Positions 3,870 through 58,417 of a DNA stretch of 64,000 nt are shown here, one piece after another. The stretch is taken from assembly GCF_003918875.1 (NCBI RefSeq), contig NW_025765647.1, positions 1,550,001 to 1,614,000 of the forward strand. The letters run 5' to 3'. Within the stretch, counting starts at the first letter, position 1. Each line of letters starts with the position of its first letter. The position numbers and the translations under genes were made by a program. Under the pieces are notes generated by a model that had not been told where the DNA came from, made no database searches, and was given only the letters and a program-made list of their open reading frames with translations. Origin of the DNA: Haliotis rubra (taxonomy: Eukaryota).

Positions 3870-5236
3870 TTTTTATCACCCTCCTCGCGTTTAGCTGGAA
3901 TCGGGGGATATAGTATTAGGCTCTGTACGTACGTACGAATTGGAATATCTCAAGAACCATTGACTAGATTCTTTTCATATTTGGTACCTAGCTTCATCAC
4001 AGTGTAGAAACGTCCAAGTCAGCTTTGGTGACCTTGACCTTCATTTCAAGGTCACAAGGGGATTTTAACGTTTTGCCTGCATGTTAAGCTGTCTCAAGAA
4101 CCGTTCACTGGATTTTCTTCATATTCAATACAACCGCCTCCGTGGTGTAGTGGTTAGAGCGTCCGCCCGGAGAGCGGAAGGTCACGGGTTCGATCCACGA
4201 CCGCGGCATACCAAAAGACATTAAAAAATGGTACTTGTTGGTCCCTGCCTGGCGTTCGGCATTAATGGGTACAACGAGCACTGGTCGTCTCGGAGTCAGT
4301 ATAATGTGTCTGAGTGGTGTATTCATGCTTCACTGCGGAATGGTATCTCAGTGGGCTAGCACTATGAAACCAGCTTAAGTCTGGGCTAGTACAAGCAGCC
4401 GCACATACACATGCATGCATGTCGTCATATGAGTGAAATATTCTCAAGCACGACATAAAACCCAATTTCACCTCTCCTCACCTCATATTCAATACCAAGC
4501 TTTATTAAGGGAAGGCGCAGGGCCCAGTCGATTTTGGTGACCTTCACATAATTTTCAAGGTCATGGCGACACTTTGAGGATTTCAGCATGTTAACCTGCA
4601 TGTTAAGCTATCTCAAGAAGCGTTCACTGGATTTTCTTCATATTTCACACCACACTTCATCCAAGGAAGGCGCAGGGTCCAGTCGATTTTGGTGACCTTC
4701 ACTTTATTTTCAAGGTCACAGAGACACTTTGAAGATTTCAGCATGTTAAATTGCATGTGAAGATAATCAGCAAGATATCGCAAAAAATATTCACTGGATT
4801 TTCTTCATATTTGACACCAAGTTTCATCTAGGGAAGGCCCAGGGCTCAGTCATTTTTGGTGACCTTCACATAATTTTCAGGGTCACGACAACACTTTGAA
4901 GATTTCAGCATGTTAATCTGAATTGTCAGCAAGATATTTCAAGAACTGTTCACTGGATTTTCTTCATACACTTTCAAGAATTCCCATGAATGTTTTTCAA
5001 TAAGCAATTTCTTTAGTACTATTTTTTGCATATTTCATACACTATGACATTCATGTCAAGGTCAAAGTCAGTCTCGAAAATATGTGTGTGTTTGAACCAC
5101 TAAAGAGCAAGATATCAAGAGAGGTTGACTGGTCATGTTTTTGTTGACATTTACCTTCATCTTAAACTTCATTACTTTATAAGTTTGACTTGATAATTTG
5201 CGGCGGGGGATTATGTCACCTAAGGGACAATGTTTT
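3870..5236 (+). mobile_element. Helentron-associated non-autonomous element (HINE / CvA-pearl-like) with internal ~150-180-bp tandem repeats
   Basis: T-rich ends; 5' subterminal tatcaccctcctcgc, palindrome and (GTAC)n microsatellite; ~5 internal units with ttcactggattttcttcatat and gacctt..aaggtca; 3' subterminal gcggcgggggattat plus hairpin tgtcacctaagggaca. Confidence 0.7.
4132..4484 (+). mobile_element. Family B tRNA-derived SINE (resembles mollusc RUDI/MESC-type), full length
   Basis: A box tggtgtagtgg, B box ggttcgatcc, (CACCT)n-like tail, 11-bp TSD atattcaatac (4121-4131 / 4485-4495). Confidence 0.9.
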
Positions 5237-14796: not shown

Positions 14797-15285
14797 GGGC
14801 GGTGTGGTAACCTAGTGGGTAAAGCGTTCACTCGTCACGCCGAAGATCTGAGTTCGATTCTTCACATGGGTGTTATGTAGGAATTCATATTTGGTGTCCC
14901 CCTCCATGATATAACTGACCCGTAAAGATCCGGGTTAGAATTGGTCTTCAGCAACCCATGCTTGTCGTAAGAGGCAACAAAAGGGATCGGGTGGTCAGGC
15001 TCGCTGACTTGGTTAACACATGAATTCGTATCTCAATTGCGAAGGTCGATGCTCGTGGTGTTGATCACTGGATTGTCTGGTCCAGACTCGATCTTTTACG
15101 AACCGCTGCAATATAACTGGAAAATTTCGGTTGGCTAGCCTAATGGTTAAAGCGTTCGCTCGTCACGCCACGACCCGGGTTCGATCCCCCACATGCGTAC
15201 AATGTGTGGAGCCCATTTCTGGTGTTCCCCCGCTGTGATATTGCTGGAATGTTGCTAAAAACGACGTAAAACTGAACTCCCTGAC
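14797..15285 (+). mobile_element. Cluster of family C (14797-14916), family A (14917-15122) and family C (15130-15285) elements
   Basis: Each segment aligns with other copies in the window. Confidence 0.85.
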
Positions 15286-30310: not shown

Positions 30311-32679
30311 GTTGAAGACAAATAGACCTGATTCATGAGAAACATGTCAAACTCTATCTCACAGAACACTAATTCCAGTCTGTTGAACACTTACCGTTAC
30401 AGACAAAAGCTATATCGATTTTGAGGGTTGTCCTTTGTTGGTACTATGTGTCTCAGAGAGCAAGCTCTAAGACACCCAGATGCCAAGCGGAACTGCATAT
30501 CAACTCGACAAGACAATACAATAATTACAACTAACTAAACAAGCGGAGTGTAACGGCATACGATCAGCCAAAGTTATAAACACCAACATCATTTAGGCGG
30601 TGCGAGAACTTTTTGGCATTTACGTTTTTACACAAAACTGCTATTGACTAGAGTCAAATTTAACCGGATTTTAAGTTTCCCACATAAGATAACATGATAC
30701 TTAACCTTGGTGTCCACAATAAATGAGTTGTCATTTAATTGAAAATATCATTTCTTTTATCTGTACATTTGATACAAGATACTGATGGAATTAATCCAAG
30801 TTTAGGTTGAGCAAACACTTCAAGCGTTCCACCACCCACCAAGCCTATTTTCTTAAGGATTGATGAGATAAAACCTACTGTGTTCTGACATTTGATATTA
30901 TACCATTATACAAGTAAATTAATTAATAACTGGACTGCTGATGAGGAGATATTATAACTGAGTGCAGCATGATATTGCACAATCAAATACATAGAACAAT
31001 CAAACTATGAAACAATTGAGAATAAACTCAAGTTGTATAGGTAGAGAATGTCCGCGCAAAAGTGAGTGAGTGAATATTGCTTAACGCCGCATCAGCAATG
31101 TTTCAGCTTTTCCCGGCGAGCAGCGCAAAAGAAAACCCAGTCTTGACTATCCTCAGAAACAAACCCCGTTTGATGTAAAGGGAAAAATAGCTGTGAAATC
31201 TTTTATGAATGGATCCTGAAAATCAGTGATGACACCAGGTGTTCCCGACAAAAGTAAGCGTGTCCTGCCCTACGGTAGCACCCGCCATTCACCCAAATTG
31301 CCTAAAAACCGGTGTAGTTTTACCTGTTGTTGTACAGCAGTACTCCTGCCTTGAGACGGTGACATGCACACACACCAGACAATCAGGTGATCAATAAACC
31401 GGAAAATGCAGTTAGATAATTTGGAATTACGACCGCTGTATGGATATTCAGAGATTCCGATGTTTATAAGTACAGAATATGGGAAAGAGAATTGTGTTAC
31501 AACACATTGAGGTCACTTGTAATGTCTCGGACCAAAAATTTCTTTTGTAGTTTATTCAGCATACTGAAATATGCAACTGAGCTTATGATGAATCTCGGGG
31601 CATTCAGTCAACCAACCGAAACATCGACCCAGATGAATTAGCTATAGAACGTCAGTGCTAAAGAATACCCAAGGAATTAAGAACACAGCCAAGGTGTATA
31701 TGGATTTCCAGTTGAATACTGATAAAGACAATACCAAATGGATTGGCTCAGGGACTGGCAGTAAGGTCAAACTATATCACACGTTCATATCAGAATAACA
31801 TAAAGGGCATCTTGACCCATTCTGTGATAACCAGTGGTTGCTCAATTAGAATATTAATGGGTAATGAACACAAGGAAAAGACCTGAAGCAGAATTACAGT
31901 AAACATAATAAGCCTTACACTGATTGTTGTTATAACAACATTATCAGCATTTGTTGTCTGCCTTACCTACACCCCCCACCGACATTTATTAAATTACTAA
32001 ATTTAATTTTGGAGTGATGCATCTGTGATGGAAAAACAAAACAAAATTAGTACACATCACTCTGTTTTAACTGCAGTGAGACTGGGTCAGATCACGGATA
32101 AATAAACAAGCATATTCTCACTGGAATATAACAATCAAAACTGATATACTGAAAAAACTTATTTCAGTATTCCTTTGTATATGTTTATGACGGTTATGGC
32201 GGGGTACTTTTTTGCGAACACCTGATCTCATGGCTGTTTGAGAGTGATTCATACACACATGCTCAGGATAAAGTTGAACACTCGACTTTGCTTTTAGTTC
32301 ATTATGGATGCAGAAAGGCTTTGTGGCTTTTACTTATATGAACCAAATTAATTTGCAGAAACTGCTGTGCTCAGAAAACAAGTGAACTGTTGCTATTCAA
32401 GAAGGCAATTTATGCCTGAATGCATCCGTGATGCACGTGCATCTCGATTTCAATGTTGTGTTTGTGCGAACTCTTCTCTTTCCACAAACAAAAACATGTC
32501 TAACCTCAATCTCAAACAATACTTTATTGTGCAAAACAGGCTATACGACCATGATTAATGTTTTCCTCAAACTTTTCCGGTGTATTTTGAAAAAATAGTT
32601 CAAATACTCCATTGATGCTTATATGTCATTTCCAATATTATGACGTTTCTTTCGCCTTTCAGTATAGCTGGAAAACTGC

Positions 32680-46949: not shown

Positions 46950-47710
46950 CGGCGGAGAGTTTGGCGGTTGCCGTGGCAGCGGGTAATATGTTTTCCAGTT
47001 GTGACCCTCCTAGGAGATATCCATGAGAAAAAAGCACAGTTTTCCATTGTTGATAACGCCAATTTTGATGCTGAGTTGCCCATTGCCCATCAGTTTTGGT
47101 GGTGACGAGCGGTGAGGACAGGACCACGATACTGTCTGTGACAGCAGAGGTTTCCTCCGCGCATACGTCGACGCACTGTATCGGCACTAATGGGTCTGTT
47201 GTGAGTCCCAATGGTCTGGCGTGTTGTTTCCGGCGTTCTGGTGAAGCGATCCTGCAGATGGTTGCGCACAATCTTTCGGTCTTGACGAAACTGAAGGTCG
47301 TCCATTGTAAGGACGGTCTTGGATGCTGTTAGTGGCCTGATACCGCTCCTGCAGTCGGTAGATCGTCCTAACATGAACATTAAAATGATTGGCTGCCCTA
47401 TCTGCAGTTTGGTCAAAATGCAATCGTCCCATAACTTGGTTCCTCTGATCACTCGTAAGTCGAGGCATGGCGATTGTGTTAAAACAATAATGATTTCAGG
47501 CGAGTTTGGGTCTCGCTTTCATTGGTAGGGTTGTCACTATATGCACGTGCATTTTCATTCTCAACAAACCTTTTACCACGTCTGCCTTTTTAGGTGCGTT
47601 CGGTCATCAGAAAACACACTGATGTTTGTAATAACTGTCAATTTTGATTGAGAAACATGTTAAAAATAAACGGTACAATCATGATAAAAACACCACCTTG
47701 TAAGAACAAA
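46950..47710 (-). mobile_element. Tc1-like transposon 5' fragment (paired-like HTH region)
   Basis: MPRLTSDQRNQVMGRL..HFNVHVRTIYRL..DRPYNGRP..ISADTVRRRMR..QQWKTVLF, frameshifted. Confidence 0.85.
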
Positions 47711-49511
47711 ATTTCTTTTGCGGTTCAGTATATGTCAAGCCAGTTTCTGGTGTGCCCCGCCGAGATATTACTGGAATGTTGGTACATGCGGCGAAGAACC
47801 ATACTCAGTTTCTCTCCCAATAAGAACTCCGATTTTAAGTCTGAAAGTGATTCAATAAGTTTCACTTCTCTGTTGGGCTTATGCTTGGGCACCACCCGAA
47901 TGACTATACACTTGTGATCCTAATTACCAGGAGGCTGCTATGATATTTTGGTCCATATGTGAATAACAGAGGAAGCGTGTTATCATCAACACAATAGAAG
48001 GCGTCATTGTGACCTACAGGCAGATGGCAGTATGATGAGTCTTGTCCGGGAAAACGAGAGGAATTTATCTTGAGCTGTCAAGTTCACACATTGAACGTAA
48101 TGGATGAAATAGTGCAACGGAAAAATAAAATGTTAACATTTCCTGAAATTTAAACATTGTCGGACATTTTGGTAAAGTCATGTTTGTCTAAGAATATTAC
48201 TTACATTTCAGGCATCCAGGTCACACTTTTCAAATTCCAGAATATCATCTAATGTGGGTGATTGTTTCTGTTTTTACCACACGTCTCAAAAGTAATGTAC
48301 CTTTGTTCAAACTTTTATAACACTGGTTGGCTAACATAAGTTGCTTGAACAGAAAGATATTGTTAGGAGTTCATCAATTTTGAAAAAGGACATGTACTGA
48401 ATGGCTGAAGACAAATAGATCTGATTTATGGGAAGCGTGACAAACACTAACCCACGTAACACTTGTTCCAATCTGTTGAACATTTACCATAACAAATAAT
48501 GGCTATATCGATTTTGGGGTTGTCCTTTGTTGGTGATACCTCAGTGGGAAAGATGCAAGACAAACAGATGCCAAGCGGAACTGCATATCAACTCAACCTG
48601 ACAATCCAATACTTGCAACGAACTAAACAATCGGAGTGTAACGGCATGCTACGATCAGCCAAAGTCATAAACACCCACATCATTTAAGCGGTGCGAGAAC
48701 TTTTGGGCATTTACGCTTTTACACAAAACTGCTATTGATTAGATACATATTTAATCAATCATGATTTCATAAAAACCTAAAGCCTTACCAATTACATAAA
48801 CAGAACAAACAAAATATGAAATAAAGGAGAGACAACCCAAGTTGTATAGGTATAGAACGTCAGTGCAAAGAATATTCACTCAGAAACAAACCCCGTTTGC
48901 TGTAAATGGGAAATAGCTGTGGAAATTATATAAATGGATCACTGAAACCAGTGGTGACACCAGGTGTTCACGCAAAAGGGGGTAAGCATGTAATCCCCAC
49001 CTGTAGCACCACCATTCACAATAATTTGCCTAAAACCGGAAGTATTTTCTTTCCTTTTTTTCATACGACGGTAGCTTTGTAAACAAACAGGACAATCAAG
49101 TGATCGATAAAGAGGAAATCCAGTTAGATAATTTAAATTACGACTGATGTGTAGAGGTACAAAGATTCATATGCTTATAAGTAAGAATATGGAGAAAAGA
49201 ATTGTATTACAACACATTGAGGTCAGTTGTAATGTCTCAGACCAAACATTTGTCTATTCAGCATACTAAAATATGCAACTGAGCTTATGATGTATCTCTG
49301 GGCTTTCAGACACCAGCAGAAAAATCGACCCAGATGAATTAAATATAGAACGGTAGTGCAAAGGAATACTCAAGGAATTAAGAACACAGCCAAGGTGTAG
49401 ATGGATTTCCAGCTGAATACTGATAAAGACAATACCAAATGGATTGGCCCAGGGACTGGCAGTAAACTCAAACTATATCGCACGTTTACATCAGAATGAC
49501 ATTAGAGACAT

Positions 49512-49571
49512 GGCACCCCTTGAAGAGCACCCTCCTCGCGGTGGGTGCTGGGTGATGCTAATAGGTCTTCA
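49512..49571 (+). ncRNA. Candidate HDV-like self-cleaving ribozyme with minimal or absent P4
   Basis: P1 GGCACCC/GGGTGCT (G-U at +1), P2 TGAAGAgC/GgTCTTCA, P3 ACC/GGT, L3 CTCCTCGC, P1.1 CC/GG, J4/2 G-C-TAA. Confidence 0.7.
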
Positions 49572-49722
49572 CCCCAGTAGTGTGGACCCGGGGCATATAG
49601 ATCCACAGCACCCTATTGGTGGTCGTGAGACGAATTGGGCAACCTGTTTGCCGTTGGTTGCGCCCGTGGGTTTTCTGTCGGTGGAGAAAGGGAGTCGGTT
49701 GGTGGTTGAGGGTATTAGGAAC
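49512..49722 (+). mobile_element. 5' end of a non-LTR retrotransposon or derivative, 3' part deleted
   Basis: GC-rich block absent from the paralogous region, starting exactly at the ribozyme G+1; similarity to the family A head continues downstream (cagcaccc..gtcgtgagacgaattggg). Confidence 0.55.
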
Positions 49723-49791
49723 CTGTTTGAAAGTGATTCATACACACATGCTTATGATATTGTCAGAGTTGTACACACGACTTTGACTGTA

Positions 49792-50156
49792 GGTGAGGTG
49801 AGGTGAGGTGAGGTGAGGTGAGGTGAGGTGAGGTGAGGTGAAATTGGGTTTAAAGTCGTGCTTGAGAATATTTCGCTCATATGACGACGTGCATGCGTGT
49901 GTATATGTATGTGCGGTTGCTTGTACTAGCCCAGCCCAGATACCATGCCGCAGTGAAGCATGAATACCCCACTCAGACACATTATACTGACTCCGAGCCG
50001 ACCAGTCCTTGTTGTACCCATTAATGCCGAGCGCCAGACAGGGACCAACAAGTACCATATTTTAACGTCTTTTGGTATGACGCGGTCGGGGATCGAACTC
50101 CGCGACCTTCCGCTCTCCGGGCGGACGCTCTAACTAACTACACCACGGAGGCGGTC
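49792..50156 (-). mobile_element. Family B SINE with expanded (CACCT)n tail
   Basis: Family B match; about 10 GGTGA units at 49792-49841. Confidence 0.9.
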
Positions 50157-52033: not shown

Positions 52034-54077
52034 TACTCAGTCAAAAAAGAAACTTCACACTCGTTTGGAGGTCGATAAGTTGAACATACATGAAAAGAGG
52101 TTTTAAATAATGATTTTATTCCATTCCGTACCCATTAAGGACGGTATACCATAAAAATCATGTTCATAATGTAACCAGTTCCACCGGAAATGCTACGGAA
52201 ATGTAAGAGAGTAAAAATTGTCAGTTACAACTTGATGAAAGCATGTCAATAGCGCGTATGCCCTCCATGAGCGTTCACAACTGCGACGCAACGTCTCCTC
52301 ATGGATTGAATGATGCGTCTGAACACAGCTAGGGGGATGCGTCGCCATAATTGTACCAACATGGCACCAAGTTCCTGCAAATTCTGTGGAGGGTTCCTTA
52401 CTTGACGGAGTCTTCTGCCCAACACATCCCATACATGTTCTATGGGACTGAGGTCGGAAGACCTTGAGGGCCACTCCATGACATTGATGCCAGCATTCCT
52501 AAGACAATTCCGCGTTAAATTGGCCGTATAAGGTCTGGCATTATCGTGTTGGAATGTCAGACCTGGGCCATGAGCTGCCATGAATGGCAAGAGCTCTTGA
52601 ATAAGCACTTGATCCCTGTATCCTGCAGCAGTTAAGTTTTCCTTGAACGACAATCAGTCTGGAACGGGCAGGACCATTAAAAGCACCCCAAACCATAACA
52701 CTACCACCCCCAAAACGGTCCATTTCCTGCACACAACACTGGGCGTTGTGTTCACCGCGTCTCCTCCAATCGATCTCAAACTGTGCAAGTGGATGTTTTG
52801 TCAGACAACCTAATCACATTGTAAATCACCGATTTTATGCATTTGTATTTAAGAATCTGTCTTTGCAACTGTCAACAAAATAAACAGCAGAACGCAAACT
52901 GCTTGCAGACGGAGGAGCCAATGACCTGTAACAGAGGCAGTGTTGGGTCATAAAGGTCAATGCACGTGCAGTTCATGATAGTTACCTGTGCAATGCACAG
53001 TGATAGACCGTTTGGATCATTCACATTGACTACTTCTAGCTGCCATCATGAAAGCTTATTCAGATGATGCTAAACGTTTAATTAGAAATGTGTTGAATTT
53101 ATTTTAAAAGAGAGCAAACGTAGCAAAACCGATTTATAAGGTGTCGGATTACATGAAACGTACAACTTTTGCTCTTGGCATGAAAAAGAACATCGTGCTA
53201 AAAATTGAGAAAAATAAACCAACAACCAATAAACAAATCCTTGTACAAAATTAGGCATCCAAAGTTAGATTCTTTTGACATCAGGGTCATCAGAGATGTC
53301 ATTCGCCGGCTATTTGCTAGCAATGAACACCTCTTCATACCTGTCACGTGCATAGCTGACCTACATTGACGAACGTTGACCCAACACTGCCGCTGTTACA
53401 GTCCTCAAGAAGTGTCAAAAACTGAGCACAATCGGTTATAAACTCTGCCAACTGCAATCACTTCCCTGACTCTCCTCTTCACTGACTTAATGCGTCACAT
53501 TCTTGTCTCTTTTACAAAGATGTCAACAATGAGAGGAGAGTCAAGCATTTCACATATTGTTTAGTCGGCAAAGGACGTTGCAGTGAGAAATCGATTACGA
53601 TTTCGCAAATGTGTCGTCACACGTGGTCTGCCCGAACGAGGTCGGTCTGCTGTGGTGCCAGTTTTTTGGAGACGTGTCCGAAGATCATGGATAGTCCGTC
53701 GACTGCATCCATCAATCCTGGCAACGTCAGTGACCGACGTTCCTGTATTCAGCATGCCAATGGCACGTTCACGTTGAATGTTTGACAGTCGTGGCATTGC
53801 AAATCAACGGATAATTGACTGTAAGAACTTGTTTTACGAGATGTCACTCTACCGTGCTAACTTGGGCTCAATTGCACGTGTCTCATAAGGTCACGTGACT
53901 AGGAACACGAGATGTCCGCTCGCACGTGCTGCATGCTTGTGCACGTCGGAGTTGCTGTGTGTCATGATGTCTTTAACAACGCATTTACCCCTAATAATAA
54001 TAATAATAACTCTTGTATTTAGTTTCAAGAAAATATTTAGAAATTTATGAGTGTGAAGTTTCTTTTTTGACTGAGTG
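52034..54077 (-). mobile_element. Tc1 (DD34E) transposon with both TIRs, disrupted by ~790 bp of foreign sequence (52770-53560)
   Basis: 29-bp TIR (c/t)actcagtcaaaaaagaaacttcacactc, TA TSD; ORF pieces 53797-53561 (MPRLS..RSGRPR), 52732-52541 (FGGGSVMVWG), 52653-52246 (FQHDNARP..WPSRSSDLSPIEHVW..GGHTRY). Confidence 0.92.
52926..53401. mobile_element. MITE nested in the Tc1
   Basis: 25-bp TIR ctgtaacagaggcagtgttgggtca / tgacccaacactgccgctgttacag. Confidence 0.7.
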
Positions 54078-55062: not shown

Positions 55063-58000
55063 CTACCAGTTGCTGATTCTGTTACGAGCTTTTCTTCCTC
55101 TACATTTGTCCAAGAGGAAGAGGGTGATGAACACCAGGAATTCCGCGATCTCTGCGACTGTCAGCATGCTGGCTCCAAGACACAGACACATCTGACCCCC
55201 GATATTCGCTGCAACAACAACACCATTGCCTGAACATCTACATCGACATAAGGAACTCCAAAATATCAAGACGACTCCCCGTACCCTGTAGAGTGATACG
55301 AAAAAGTATGCTTTAAATATACTTCTCTTCTTAAAATTATTTCTGACTCTGGATACGTTTCGACTATTCCCGTGAAGATCGGATTTAACTTGGTCTCCAG
55401 CAAACCATGCTTGTCATAATGGGCGACTAACAGGATCGTGTGGTCAGGGTGGGTGACTTTTGACACATGTCATCGTATCCCAGTTGCGTAGATGCCAATG
55501 ATGTTGACCACTGGATTGTCTGGTCCAGACTAGATTATTTACAGACTGCTGTCATATAGCTGGAATATTGCTGAGTGTGGCGTTGAACAAAACAATAAAC
55601 CAACACACAAATAAACAAAAGTTTCGACTCGGTGTGTGTAAGTTTGTTTTGACACTATTTCGTTTTCATTTGAGGTGAGGTGAGGTGAGATTGGGTTTAA
55701 CGTCGTGCTTGAGAACATTTCGCTCATATGACGACGTGCATGCGTGTGTATGTGTATGTACGGCTGCTTGTACTAGCCCGGCGGAAACTGGTTTTATAGT
55801 GCTAGCCCACTGAGATACCATGCCGCAGTGAAGCATGAATATCCCACTCAGACACATTATACTGACTCCAAGCCGACCAGTCCTTGTTGTACCCATTAAT
55901 GCCGAGCGCCAGACAGGGACCAACAAGTACCATATTTTAACGTCATTTGGTATGACGCGGTCGGGGAAGTTTTCAGTTGAACATTAAGGACACGAATATG
56001 ATTTTCATAATCGAAAACTCAAGATGCCAATGCAGTACTAGGTTCTCGCTGTCAAACAATACTATTCGGCTAAGATATATGGCACTTACAAAAAAGCGAG
56101 GCTGCTGTGTATTGAGGTTGCTGTGTGATGGTTGTCACCATCATCTGGTCGTAGAACACTCTCAGTACCACGAAGTTCTCTCTGAATCAAAGACATCATG
56201 AAGTATTTGTCCATCTACTACCCAGTGTGATGGGAGTAATACTGCCGCCATTTTGAAAATTTACATGTGCGTCTTTTGTGCTTTCGGTCCATCTCATCAA
56301 CCTTTTTCTTTTCTGAACCTTTCATGAAGGACTTTCCATTGTGCTACATATTCCCATTAGAACATAAAGAATTACATTTTACAAAACAACAACATTACGC
56401 TGCTTTAGATGTACGGCTGATACTGAGTATTCAATGCCCTGGGCGCTGTTTCAAACGAATAGAAGACTGAAACATTGGTTTGAAACACAAATGTATCACA
56501 TTTCCTTCGCATCCATAGATTGAAATAAACAATAGTTGTTTATGACATTTTTGTTACGGAAACAGAGACTAGATCACGTTTCTCAAAGCAATCTTGGAGC
56601 TACAATGAATGTACGTCCATGTGAAAGTATGGATGTTATGGTCACCCAAGCGCTAAGATCGCTCTCTGGAACGAGGCCTTGGTCCACGCGGAAGTCTTAC
56701 GTCATGGCCTCTTTGTCCTGTGCCCCTCTGGTCTTCAGGAGGTGGTTGATCCAGACCTTTGCTGGGAATGAGCTAGAGGACACCTGGGCAGTGTAACTGT
56801 CAAACTTGCACTCGCTGACACACCCACATCCCTCCAGGAAGTTAGCTTTGCTGGACTCTGCATCTTGTGAAAAGACACGACAAAACCCGTTCCACATCAA
56901 TGAGACGTCTTTGCTAAAAGCAGGGTCGATTGTACAATTCTGACCATACCGTGAGTATCTGTTTCTTTGACGCCACATTCAGCAGTATTATGGCTGTATC
57001 CAGCATCCAGCAAATGATTACACAGTGTAACACGTTTTGGATATTTCCACATATAATATACCACGATAGAAGAGGTCTCACCTCATTGTAAAAGACTACC
57101 GTTATCGGTAAATTCCTAGTCCCGTATACTCACCAAGAATGGGCTTGTAACAACTATCCTCTCTGGTCAATGAACACAAAGGACCACCCCCTGCAATATA
57201 AATCTGTAAATGTGATTGTTACGCAACCATTCCTTCACGGAGCACTACCATTTCCGTCACGAGATAGAAAGAAAGGAATTAATTATATTTTTTTACTACA
57301 GAATTCCATTGAATAAAAAAATACTGAAATACACGTGCGATGAAATCGTTTTGAAAATGAGTTAATAACTTACGTGGATCAGAAGGTCCGACACATCCAC
57401 ACTGGTCGAAGGCCTTGGTCTGGACACACTCCATGACGCAATGGTGAAAGGTGTAAGGGGAGTAGTACTTGAGAGGATTCACAAACTTGGGACTAGTTGT
57501 GTCCACACAGTCCACGTGATCAAACGCCATGTAGGGAAGCGGTTGGTAGACATACTACAAACAAAGCTTCACGTTATTTGTGTTTAGTACGAAATCACCT
57601 TATTGAAATGTAGGACTTAATTGCACAATGCTATGGTTAGCTTACACAGATAATATACTAGTGCTCAAAAGAAAGTATACAGTGTGTTGACCAAACTTTG
57701 ACCAAACGCATAATAATGAACATCTGCTAATTTCAATAGAGCATTCAATTTTACAGCAAATATACACAATTTCATTTCATACAAAGTCGAGGTACCGTTT
57801 GACTGACACTGAAAGACGCGTGGTATCATAGTGTGAACTTTACACAAATGAACAAAACACGTCAATGCATTGATGACATAAGACGACGGATGACGTTAGA
57901 CGTGATCCGTTGCCATTCCTCTTGGAGACCTTGTTCCAGTTGTTGAGCGGTGACAGGTGGCGCTGGTAGTCTTCTGATTTGTCGATCCAGGTAGTCCCAT

Positions 58001-58417
58001 AAGTGTTCCATCGGATTCATGTCGGGAGAACATGCTTGCAACGTCAAGACAACGATGTTAGCGTTGTGGCGAAAGTCGTTTGTCAACTTTGCTGTATGAG
58101 GCCTTACGTTATCGTGCAATGCCACGTGGTTGTTGCTAGATAATCGCAACACAACTGGTCGCAAAAGTTCATCCCCGTATCTTCGAGCATTCAGATTGCC
58201 ATGAGTAATTATTAGTCTCGTTTTGAGATCGCAGGAATAATGAAGGAATGCGCAGGGAAGTTATTCACTTCGAAACACAGCCCCAACGATGTTTGCTTGA
58301 ATATTCATACGTACTGACCTCATATTTTTTCATGGAGACATATGTGGAGAAGCCGGATGCCACCATCACAATGGTGGAGCCAGCGTCTGGGTGGACAGAT
58401 GGATCATGGAGAAATAC
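55063..58417 (-). CDS. DEG/ENaC paralogue C, exons 3-8 (58417-58319, 57554-57374, 57190-57134, 56863-56701, 56181-56090, 55208-55063); complete exons 1-2 not in the window
   Basis: Same exon sizes and phases as A (99, 181, 57, 163, 92, 146 nt), open frame, TM2 SNIGGQMCLCLGASMLTVAE. Confidence 0.88.
55368..55592 (+). mobile_element. Family A element in intron 7 of C
   Basis: Family A match. Confidence 0.85.
55672..55966 (-). mobile_element. Family B SINE, 5'-truncated
   Basis: Family B match. Confidence 0.88.
57862..58235 (-). mobile_element. Tc1 transposase catalytic-domain fragment in intron 3 of C
   Basis: LHDNVRPHTAK...CSPDMNPMEHLWDYLDRQIR...LQEEWQRI. Confidence 0.85.

What the first reader, a model, noticed from the sequence alone, without database searches (positions are those of the whole stretch)
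49512..49571. Compact HDV-like ribozyme starting exactly at an insertion boundary
Seen: a nested double pseudoknot can be drawn. P1 is 49512-18/49543-49 with a G-U at +1; P2 is 49521-28/49564-71 with one G-G mismatch; P3 is ACC/GGT; L3 is CTCCTCGC; P1.1 is CC/GG; the putative catalytic C49558 sits in G-C-TAA. Only 6 nt (GTGATG) stand where P4 would be. Homology to the paralogous duplicon (~31790-31810) stops at 49511, so the inserted element begins at the predicted cleavage nucleotide. Known: the antigenomic HDV ribozyme has ACC-UCCUCGC-GGU and GCUAA, and HDV-like ribozymes process the 5' ends of several non-LTR retrotransposons (R2, RTE, L1Tc/Ingi). Inference: this is the self-cleaving 5' end of a mollusc LINE, in a near-minimal P4-less form.
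Basis: partly seen in the sequence, partly recalled or inferred. Interest (0 to 1): 0.85.

Follow-up and report, generated by a model that had tools for sequence, protein, structure and literature searches.

The report
P4-less HDV-like ribozyme heading a LINE
The 60 bases are a decayed copy of a very small hepatitis-delta-type self-cutting RNA that forms the exact first bases of a jumping-gene (LINE) family with thousands of copies in this mollusc genome; the feature is real, but it is a known trick and a ribozyme of this small type was already reported from abalone in 2011.

Summary
Observation confirmed. The single copy is only modest evidence: Rfam scores it below threshold, and 3 of 150 shuffled windows pass my strict descriptor. 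The family is decisive. The 22-nt core occurs about 3,760 times in this 1.38-Gb genome against 0 in the control. In 69 of 70 sampled copies the element starts exactly at the predicted cleavage G, next to unrelated flanks. Full-length copies (CCHC ORF1, APE, RT, RNase H, (TCAAC)n tail) have target-site duplications abutting that G. P2 shows compensatory changes between subfamilies. The same invariant core with a 4-nt linker in place of P4 occurs in phage and metagenome "minimal/theta" HDV-like ribozymes, where P1 covaries at 6 of 7 pairs. The window copy is a dead 211-nt 5' fragment (49512-49722) with no tail or duplication and a substitution in P3. Novelty is low: LINE 5' processing by HDV-like ribozymes is established, and a ribozyme with 5 nt instead of P4 was reported from Haliotis discus in 2011 (cited in PMC3774820). 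This scan has already noted the same family many times elsewhere in this genome. Self-cleavage was not tested.

The parts
49512..49518 (+). P1 5' strand (GGCACCC). G49512 is the +1 nucleotide; the predicted cleavage is 5' of it.
   Evidence: Pairs with 49543-49549. 69 of 70 genomic copies start here. P1 covaries at 6 of 7 pairs in the wider family.
49521..49528 (+). P2 5' strand (TGAAGAGC)
   Evidence: Pairs with 49564-49571, with one G-G mismatch at 49527/49565. Two P2 pairs change on both sides between subfamilies.
49529..49531 (+). In the family register P3 starts at 49530, where this copy has C instead of A.
   Evidence: The cmsearch alignment marks this pair as non-standard.
49532..49539 (+). 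L3 loop CTCCTCGC (family: TCCTCGT, 7 nt). CC 49534-35 forms the 5' side of P1.1.
   Evidence: The core is identical to phage and metagenome minimal ribozymes.
49540..49542 (+). P3 3' strand (GGT)
49543..49549 (+). P1 3' strand (GGGTGCT)
49550..49551 (+). GG, the 3' side of P1.1
   Evidence: 99% of cells paired in 57 copies
49552..49557 (+). G-TGAT-G, the short linker that replaces P4 (family consensus G-TAAC-G)
   Evidence: The linker TGAT also occurs in metagenome member L121.
49558..49561 (+). J4/2 CTAA with the putative catalytic C49558
   Evidence: Aligned to the GCUAA of RF00094 and RF02682. At least 90% conserved in A1.
49564..49571 (+). P2 3' strand (GGTCTTCA)
49572..49722 (+). LINE 5' leader after the ribozyme. 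It ends abruptly at 49722, without ORFs, a 3' tail or a target-site duplication.
   Evidence: 80-85% identity to nt 1-211 of other copies. Paralogue homology resumes at 49723.

Best explanation
Window 49512-49571 is one copy of a minimal, P4-less HDV-like self-cleaving ribozyme. This ribozyme forms the first ~60 nt of a large family of APE-type, RNase H-bearing (I/Nimb-like) LINEs in a mollusc, probably abalone, genome.

Inferred mechanism, by analogy with R2, RTE, L1Tc and Baggins. The element is transcribed from its own or an upstream promoter. The nascent RNA folds into the nested double pseudoknot (P1, P1.1, P2, P3). The J4/2 cytosine (C49558 in this copy) acts with Mg2+ to cut the bond 5' of G+1. 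This releases an RNA that begins exactly at the element's first base, and that RNA is reverse transcribed by target-primed reverse transcription. This is why full-length DNA copies start at that G, directly after the target-site duplication.

What is shown and what is inferred. Shown here: the fold, the invariant core, the covariation, the precise 5' ends, the target-site duplications and the LINE coding capacity. Inferred: actual cleavage, and its role as opposed to transcription starting at G+1.

The window copy. It is a non-functional relic, a 211-nt 5' fragment. It sits where the paralogous duplicon has a different ~423 nt (31811-32233). It was therefore truncated by a later deletion or captured during repair. 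It carries a P3 substitution and a P2 mismatch, and is probably weakened.
For: Fold and core:
- All helices are present.
- Full-length alignment to RF00094 and RF02682, with only P4 missing.
- Sole descriptor hit in the window.

Abundance and 5' ends:
- 1895 + 1867 core matches in the genome against 0 for the reversed control; 1523 first-look BLAST candidates.
- 69 of 70 copies begin at GGCACCC, with unrelated flanks and no preference for the base at -1.
- Target-site duplications abut G+1: TGACAAGGT in L031 and AATTGTAGTG in L032.

LINE identity:
- Zinc knuckle, Exo_endo_phos and RVT_1, RNase H, (TCAAC)n tail.

Selection on the RNA structure:
- 97.6% of cells paired.
- P2 has A-U to G-C in 17 copies and G-C to A-U in 2; shifted controls pair at 37-50%.
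- Subfamilies A and B share only the first ~320 nt at 82%. Inside the ribozyme they differ only at unpaired positions.

Same core elsewhere:
- More than 120 metagenome contigs, with 58 of the 84 matches examined passing my descriptor, and 10 phage contigs.
- About half of the metagenome contigs checked carry tRNA genes, often in arrays.
- There P1 changes on both sides at 6 of 7 pairs with 98.6% pairing.

Literature:
- Members of this minimal class self-cleave in vitro (PMC10879173).
- P4 is dispensable, and a P4-less ribozyme was reported in abalone (PMC3774820).
Against: - No cleavage assay was possible.
- Public runs gave only low-coverage contigs that cannot show RNA 5' ends.
- Rfam gathering scores are not reached, and a whole-genome RF00094 search reported nothing at E<=1.
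- Within this genome P1, P3 and P1.1 never vary, so they say nothing either way. P1 covariation comes from a model-fitted alignment of distant members.
- A defined first base is also what an internal promoter would give.
- Six related LINE loci from other assemblies showed no ribozyme.
- The window copy has a non-standard P3 pair in the family register.
Confidence: 0.85

Rival explanations
1. The conserved first ~60 nt are an internal (downstream) promoter or initiator. Copies start at G49512-equivalents because transcription starts there, and the HDV-like fold is incidental or secondary.
For: Many LINEs (jockey, I, L1) define their 5' end by an internal promoter. The first 77 nt of L1Tc are both a promoter and a ribozyme (PMC3383444). 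LINE-derived heads of mollusc SINEs were read as promoters (PMC4758252). Precise 5' ends do not separate a transcription start from cleavage.
Against: A DNA promoter does not explain the compensatory base-pair changes in P2. It also does not explain base-for-base identity of the unpaired core with phage ribozymes that have a different P1 and P2. A dual role remains possible.
Confidence: 0.07
2. This copy was retained or co-opted by the host: it still self-cleaves and cuts a host transcript, like the intronic CPEB3 ribozyme.
For: The fragment lies between duplicated gene segments. Apart from P3, the core is intact.
Against: The paralogous copy lacks it. It shows neutral-looking decay, about 80% identity to other copies, and a P3 substitution. 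The only channel-like ORF nearby is on the opposite strand and is weak (ASC, E 0.004, below cutoff).
Confidence: 0.04
3. Chance resemblance: a GC-rich stretch that happens to satisfy an HDV descriptor.
For: The loose descriptor hits 43 of 150 shuffled windows. The Rfam E-values are not significant.
Against: About 3,760 copies share the core against 0 in the control. The position coincides to the base with the element boundary. Helices covary.
Confidence: 0.01

Closest known systems
P4-less HDV-like ribozyme of abalone (Haliotis discus), Webb & Luptak 2011, as cited in PMC3774820
   Same: An HDV-like ribozyme with about 5 nt in place of the P4 stem, in an abalone. By description this is almost certainly the same ribozyme family.
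   Different: The 2011 paper is not held, so the sequence could not be compared. I could not check whether it linked the ribozyme to LINE 5' ends or gave copy numbers. The identity of my genome as an abalone is inferred, not shown.
Minimal HDV-like ribozymes (drz-Mtgn) and theta ribozymes of gut Caudoviricetes (PMC10879173)
   Same: No P4. The invariant core is identical: ACC-UCCUCGY-GGU, then the P1 3' strand, then GGG-UAAY-GCUAA. P1 is 7 bp and starts with G-U or G-C. P1 and P2 vary freely and covary.
   Different: Theta ribozymes sit at tRNA 3' ends in phage tRNA arrays. The mollusc copies follow random flanks and head a LINE. That paper reported about 99% of such ribozymes in phages and did not search molluscs.
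HDV-like ribozymes at the 5' ends of non-LTR retrotransposons (R2, R1, R4, RTE, Ingi/L1Tc, LOA/Baggins; PMC5786205, PMC3185411)
   Same: The ribozyme's +1 base is the element's first base. The proposed role is to release the element's RNA from longer transcripts. Bipartite, internally deleted derivatives keep the 5' end (L002, L074).
   Different: Most of these ribozymes have a P4 stem; the silkmoth R2 ribozymes are an exception (PMC3774820). This LINE has CCHC ORF1, APE, RT and RNase H, so it is I/Nimb-like. That clade is not among the six listed, but I could not establish the clade here.
LP-SINE / Nimb 'LINE promoter' head (PMC4758252)
   Same: The same genome group (Haliotis, other molluscs) and the same LINE leader region. 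The abundant SINE in this window shares the LINE leader.
   Different: The SINE head aligns to the ~70 nt after the ribozyme, not to the ribozyme itself. My first idea that the LP head is the ribozyme is therefore not supported.

Membership tests
HDV-like (delta-like) self-cleaving ribozymes | P1 helix of 6-7 bp that starts at the cleavage site, with G at +1 paired to U or C | tested here: met
   GGCACCC/GGGTGCT with G-U at +1. 98.5% paired in 57 copies. Covaries in the wider family.
HDV-like (delta-like) self-cleaving ribozymes | P2 pseudoknot helix between the segment after P1 and the 3' end | tested here: met
   7 of 8 pairs in the window copy and 8 of 8 in the consensus. Two pairs have compensatory changes.
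HDV-like (delta-like) self-cleaving ribozymes | 3-bp P3 closing a ~7-nt L3 (UCCUCGY), and a 2-bp P1.1 between L3 CC and GG after P1 | tested here: inconclusive
   Met in the family consensus. In the window copy the first P3 pair is C-U in the family register, or P3 is kept by a 1-nt shift that gives an 8-nt L3.
HDV-like (delta-like) self-cleaving ribozymes | Catalytic cytosine in J4/2 (C-N-R-A) | tested here: met
   C49558 in GCTAA, aligned to the GCUAA of RF00094 and RF02682.
HDV-like (delta-like) self-cleaving ribozymes | Rfam gathering score (RF00094 50 bits, RF02682 44 bits) | tested here: not met
   24.9 and 21.7 bits. The shortfall goes with the missing P4, 32 and 17 model positions. P4 is not required for activity (PMC3774820).
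HDV-like (delta-like) self-cleaving ribozymes | Mg2+-dependent self-cleavage giving 5'-OH at +1 | not testable with these tools
   Public runs are contigs only.
Minimal drz / theta ribozymes | No P4 domain, short L4, conserved core nucleotides | tested here: met
   The exact core with a 4-nt linker is shared with more than 120 metagenome contigs and 10 phage contigs. The model built on mollusc copies finds them at 20-57 bits.
Minimal drz / theta ribozymes | tRNA 3' end within about 5 nt of the cleavage site (tRNA-associated theta subgroup) | tested here: not met
   Upstream flanks of 70 copies are unrelated. The only tRNA in the window is at 4136-4208.
LINE 5'-processing ribozymes | Cleavage site coincides with the first nucleotide of a non-LTR retrotransposon | tested here: met
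   69 of 70 copies. Target-site duplications abut G+1. APE, RT and RNase H lie downstream.
Nimb clade of I-like LINEs | RT phylogeny with reference elements | not tested
   No reference sequences were available. The domain set (CCHC ORF1, APE, RT, RNase H) is compatible with I, Nimb, Ingi or LOA.

The most novel reading that the evidence does not exclude
The invariant core of this animal LINE ribozyme matches base for base that of the phage 'theta' / metagenomic minimal HDV-like ribozymes, a class reported as about 99% confined to Caudoviricetes. If the match reflects common descent or horizontal exchange rather than convergence on the only workable minimal core, one ribozyme lineage would serve both tRNA 3' processing in phages and LINE 5' processing in animals. 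The roughly half of the metagenome contigs that have no tRNA nearby might then be further eukaryotic or other mobile-element hosts.
Probability: 0.15. Interest if true: 0.6.

Novelty: new member of a known kind. Interest (0 to 1): 0.3.

Why it matters
The result shows how this LINE family gets its exact 5' end. It also gives annotators a sharp one-base marker for full-length and internally deleted copies in abalone genomes. It documents that the smallest natural HDV-like architecture is used on a large scale in an animal genome, with thousands of copies. That broadens the host range given in the recent theta-ribozyme work. Neither the mechanism nor the P4-less form in abalone is new, and this particular copy is a dead fragment.

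Tried and rejected
- Rfam at gathering thresholds found only a tRNA in the window. RF00094 over the whole genome found nothing at E<=1.
- Six related LINE loci from other assemblies (L076-L081, 55-70% RT identity) had no ribozyme by my model R1, by Rfam or by my descriptor. They may be 5'-truncated or may be other families, so this is not evidence of absence. P0006 was not on record.
- The first versions of my descriptor missed the window copy because of a regex greediness bug and too tight a J4/2 offset. This was fixed.
- RNA evidence failed. No run on record is RNA, and the four 'RNA?' runs are low-depth contigs with no information on ends.
- Nested MFE folding cannot represent the pseudoknots and was uninformative.
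- tblastn of the LINE proteins against the metagenome contigs found nothing.
- I considered that the ~68-bp 'LP-SINE head' of PMC4758252 is the ribozyme. I rejected this after aligning the window's SINE to the LINE leader: the SINE matches the module after the ribozyme.
- Webb & Luptak 2011 and Ruminski 2011 are not held, so the prior abalone report is known only through its citation in PMC3774820.
- The LINE clade and the host gene's strand were not resolved (one search gave only a weak ASC hit on the minus strand).

Full report
**1. The observation**

- P1 is GGCACCC (49512-18) with GGGTGCT (49543-49), 7 bp, with a G-U pair at +1.
- P2 is 49521-28 with 49564-71. It has 7 of 8 pairs, with G49527 opposite G49565.
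- P3 is ACC (49529-31) with GGT (49540-42), and L3 is CTCCTCGC.
- GG 49550-51 can pair with CC 49534-35 to form P1.1.
- C49558 lies in G-CTAA.
- Only GTGATG stands where P4 would be.

Alignment with the paralogous duplicon shows good homology up to ...CAT at 49511 and none from 49512. Homology resumes at 49723, matching 32234. The foreign piece is therefore exactly 49512-49722.

**2. Is it more than chance?**

For this copy alone, only modestly.
- Rfam aligns it end to end to HDV_ribozyme (RF00094, 24.9 bits; gathering score 50) and to HDV-F-prausnitzii (RF02682, 21.7 bits; gathering score 44). Only the P4 positions are missing. The E-values are 0.4-0.8 on 2.5 kb.
- A descriptor that I wrote finds this site as the only hit on both strands of the window.
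- Its strict form also hits 3 of 150 dinucleotide-shuffled windows, and its loose form hits 43 of 150.

**3. The family settles it**

Abundance and 5' ends:
- A BLAST of 49512-49722 against the window's own genome (1.378 Gb, 2855 contigs) gave 1523 first-look candidates. The 39 scored matches other than the window's own copy were 78-82% identical, and most started at query base 1.
- The 22-nt core (L3 through P1.1, up to 2 mismatches) occurs 1895 + 1867 times, against 0 for the reversed control.
- I read 70 copies: 30 best BLAST hits and 40 taken in contig order. 69 begin exactly at GGCACCC, after unrelated flanks and with no preference for the base at -1. One is 5'-truncated by 4 nt.

The elements behind the ribozyme:
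- They are 5.5-6.8 kb long.
- They encode a zinc-knuckle ORF1, an Exo_endo_phos endonuclease and RVT_1, and in subfamily B an RNase H.
- They end in gacgtaaagc(TCAAC)n.
- Two full-length copies have target-site duplications that abut G+1: TGACAAGGT in L031 and AATTGTAGTG in L032.
- Protein relatives are APE-RT-RNase H elements. The only taxon-bearing names come from a sea slug and a bivalve symbiont bin.
- The host is thus a mollusc. The assembly size and earlier scan notes point to an abalone, which I did not test.

**4. Evidence for RNA structure**

Within the genome, on 57 copies, 97.6% of the cells of the drawn double pseudoknot pair, against 37-50% when partners are shifted. P2 has two pairs that change on both sides: A-U to G-C in 17 copies and G-C to A-U in 2, with G-U intermediates. 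P1, P3 and P1.1 never vary here, so they are uninformative.

LINE subfamilies A (L031) and B (L034) are alignable only over the first ~320 nt, at 82%. Inside the ribozyme they differ only at unpaired positions: J1/2, the base between P2 and P3, and the J4/2 spacer.

Beyond the genome, I ran a pattern that fixes only L3, P3, GGG and GCTAA and leaves P1 and P2 free.
- It hit more than 120 metagenome contigs (the scan stopped at its limit), nearly all with a 4-nt linker TAAC or TAAT. It also hit 10 large phage contigs.
- 58 of the 84 matches examined pass my descriptor.
- About half of the contigs checked carry tRNA genes, often in arrays.
- The covariance model built on the mollusc copies aligns 72 of these matches. 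In that alignment 6 of 7 P1 pairs change on both sides and 98.6% of cells pair. The alignment is fitted to the model, which favours pairing.

These are the minimal, P4-less HDV-like ribozymes first found in metagenomes, and the 'theta' ribozymes of gut Caudoviricetes. Members of this class cleave in vitro (PMC10879173).

**5. What the window copy is**

It is a 211-nt 5' fragment with no ORF, no tail and no target-site duplication. Where it sits, the paralogue has a different ~423 nt (31811-32233). Either a later deletion removed the rest of the element plus flank, or a 5' piece was captured during repair.

Relative to the family it carries three kinds of change:
- A to C at 49530. This breaks the first P3 pair unless the register shifts by one and L3 becomes 8 nt.
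- The P2 G-G mismatch.
- TGAT instead of TAAC in the linker. This variant also occurs in a metagenome member.

It is probably weakened. A weak channel-like ORF nearby lies on the opposite strand, so a role in a host transcript is unlikely.

**6. Mechanism**

Shown: the fold, the core, the covariation, the one-base-precise 5' ends, the target-site duplications and the LINE coding capacity.

Inferred, by analogy with R2, RTE, L1Tc and Baggins (PMC5786205, PMC3185411): co-transcriptional cleavage 5' of G+1 by the J4/2 cytosine frees the element's RNA from any upstream transcript.

A defined first base would also fit an internal promoter. The covariation and the shared phage core argue for an RNA function, and a dual role as in L1Tc is possible.

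Public runs gave no usable RNA ends.

**7. Novelty**

- LINE 5' processing by HDV-like ribozymes is established in six clades (PMC5786205).
- P4 is dispensable, and silkmoth R2 ribozymes lack it.
[quoted passage not shown] I followed this lead from earlier scan notes and confirmed the citation. The 2011 paper itself is not held.
- The scan has already reported this family from many other places in this genome.

Two points may go beyond the literature I could read. One is the scale, about 3,760 copies. The other is the exact identity of the core with phage theta ribozymes, a class reported as about 99% phage-confined in a survey that did not include molluscs.

My initial idea that the 'LP-SINE head' of PMC4758252 equals the ribozyme is wrong. 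The window's SINE aligns to the leader just after the ribozyme.

**8. Verdict**

This copy is a relic. It is a new member of a known kind, of modest interest.

Noticed in passing
window 14917-15000 (compare window 49572-49650, L034:160-250): An abundant SINE-like repeat starts with a sequence homologous to the LINE leader immediately after the ribozyme's P2 3' strand (CCCGT..GGACCCGGGG..GGTCCACAGCACCC..GTCGTAAGAGGC). The hairpin arms appear to change in a compensating way. This fits the 'LP-SINE' head of PMC4758252.
   Followed up: partly
window 31811-32233 versus 49512-49722: At the same point of two paralogous duplicons, one copy has ~423 nt and the other has the 211-nt LINE 5' fragment. The fragment has no tail or target-site duplication. 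This suggests insertion plus deletion, or repair-mediated capture.
   Followed up: partly
window 49793-49841 and 49821-50000: A (GGTGA)n microsatellite is followed by a minus-strand repeat that also occurs near other LINE copies (L002, L013, L027). It is probably the tail and body of a SINE or LINE 3' end on the minus strand.
   Followed up: no
window 47090-47468 (-), 52246-52653 (-), 57862-58164 (-): Tc1/mariner-type transposase remnants (HTH_Tnp_Tc3_2, DDE_3) recur in the duplicated segments.
   Followed up: no
window 56697-56978 (-): An ORF gives a weak amiloride-sensitive sodium channel (ASC) hit, E 0.004, below the Pfam cutoff. It may be an exon of the duplicated channel gene, on the strand opposite to the ribozyme.
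   Followed up: no
L041 (G000:C14:1469894-1470594): Two ribozyme cores lie 60 nt apart, a tandem partial duplication of the ribozyme at a LINE 5' end.
   Followed up: no
L024/L025 (G000:C2109, element starts 1172 nt apart): Two LINE 5' ends follow each other head to tail. The first element is cut off after about 890 nt.
   Followed up: no
L105 (PEAW01051765.1, 1340 nt): A contig of unknown origin consists of a 670-nt unit repeated twice. It carries a ribozyme with the same P2 as the mollusc LINE and 83% identity to LINE nt 9-117, but its P1 is imperfect.
   Followed up: partly
L082, L084, L087, L091, L097, L100-L103, L113, L136, L145, L151 and others (metagenome contigs): About half of the metagenome contigs with the same minimal core have no tRNA nearby. 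Several carry 2-4 ribozyme copies within a few kb (L097, L100, L136, L146). Their hosts and roles are unknown, and no LINE-like RT was found by tblastn.
   Followed up: partly
L002, L072, L074: These are bipartite, internally deleted LINE derivatives: the 5' 200-490 nt, including the ribozyme, joined to the last ~65 nt and tail or to the 3' half of the element.
   Followed up: partly
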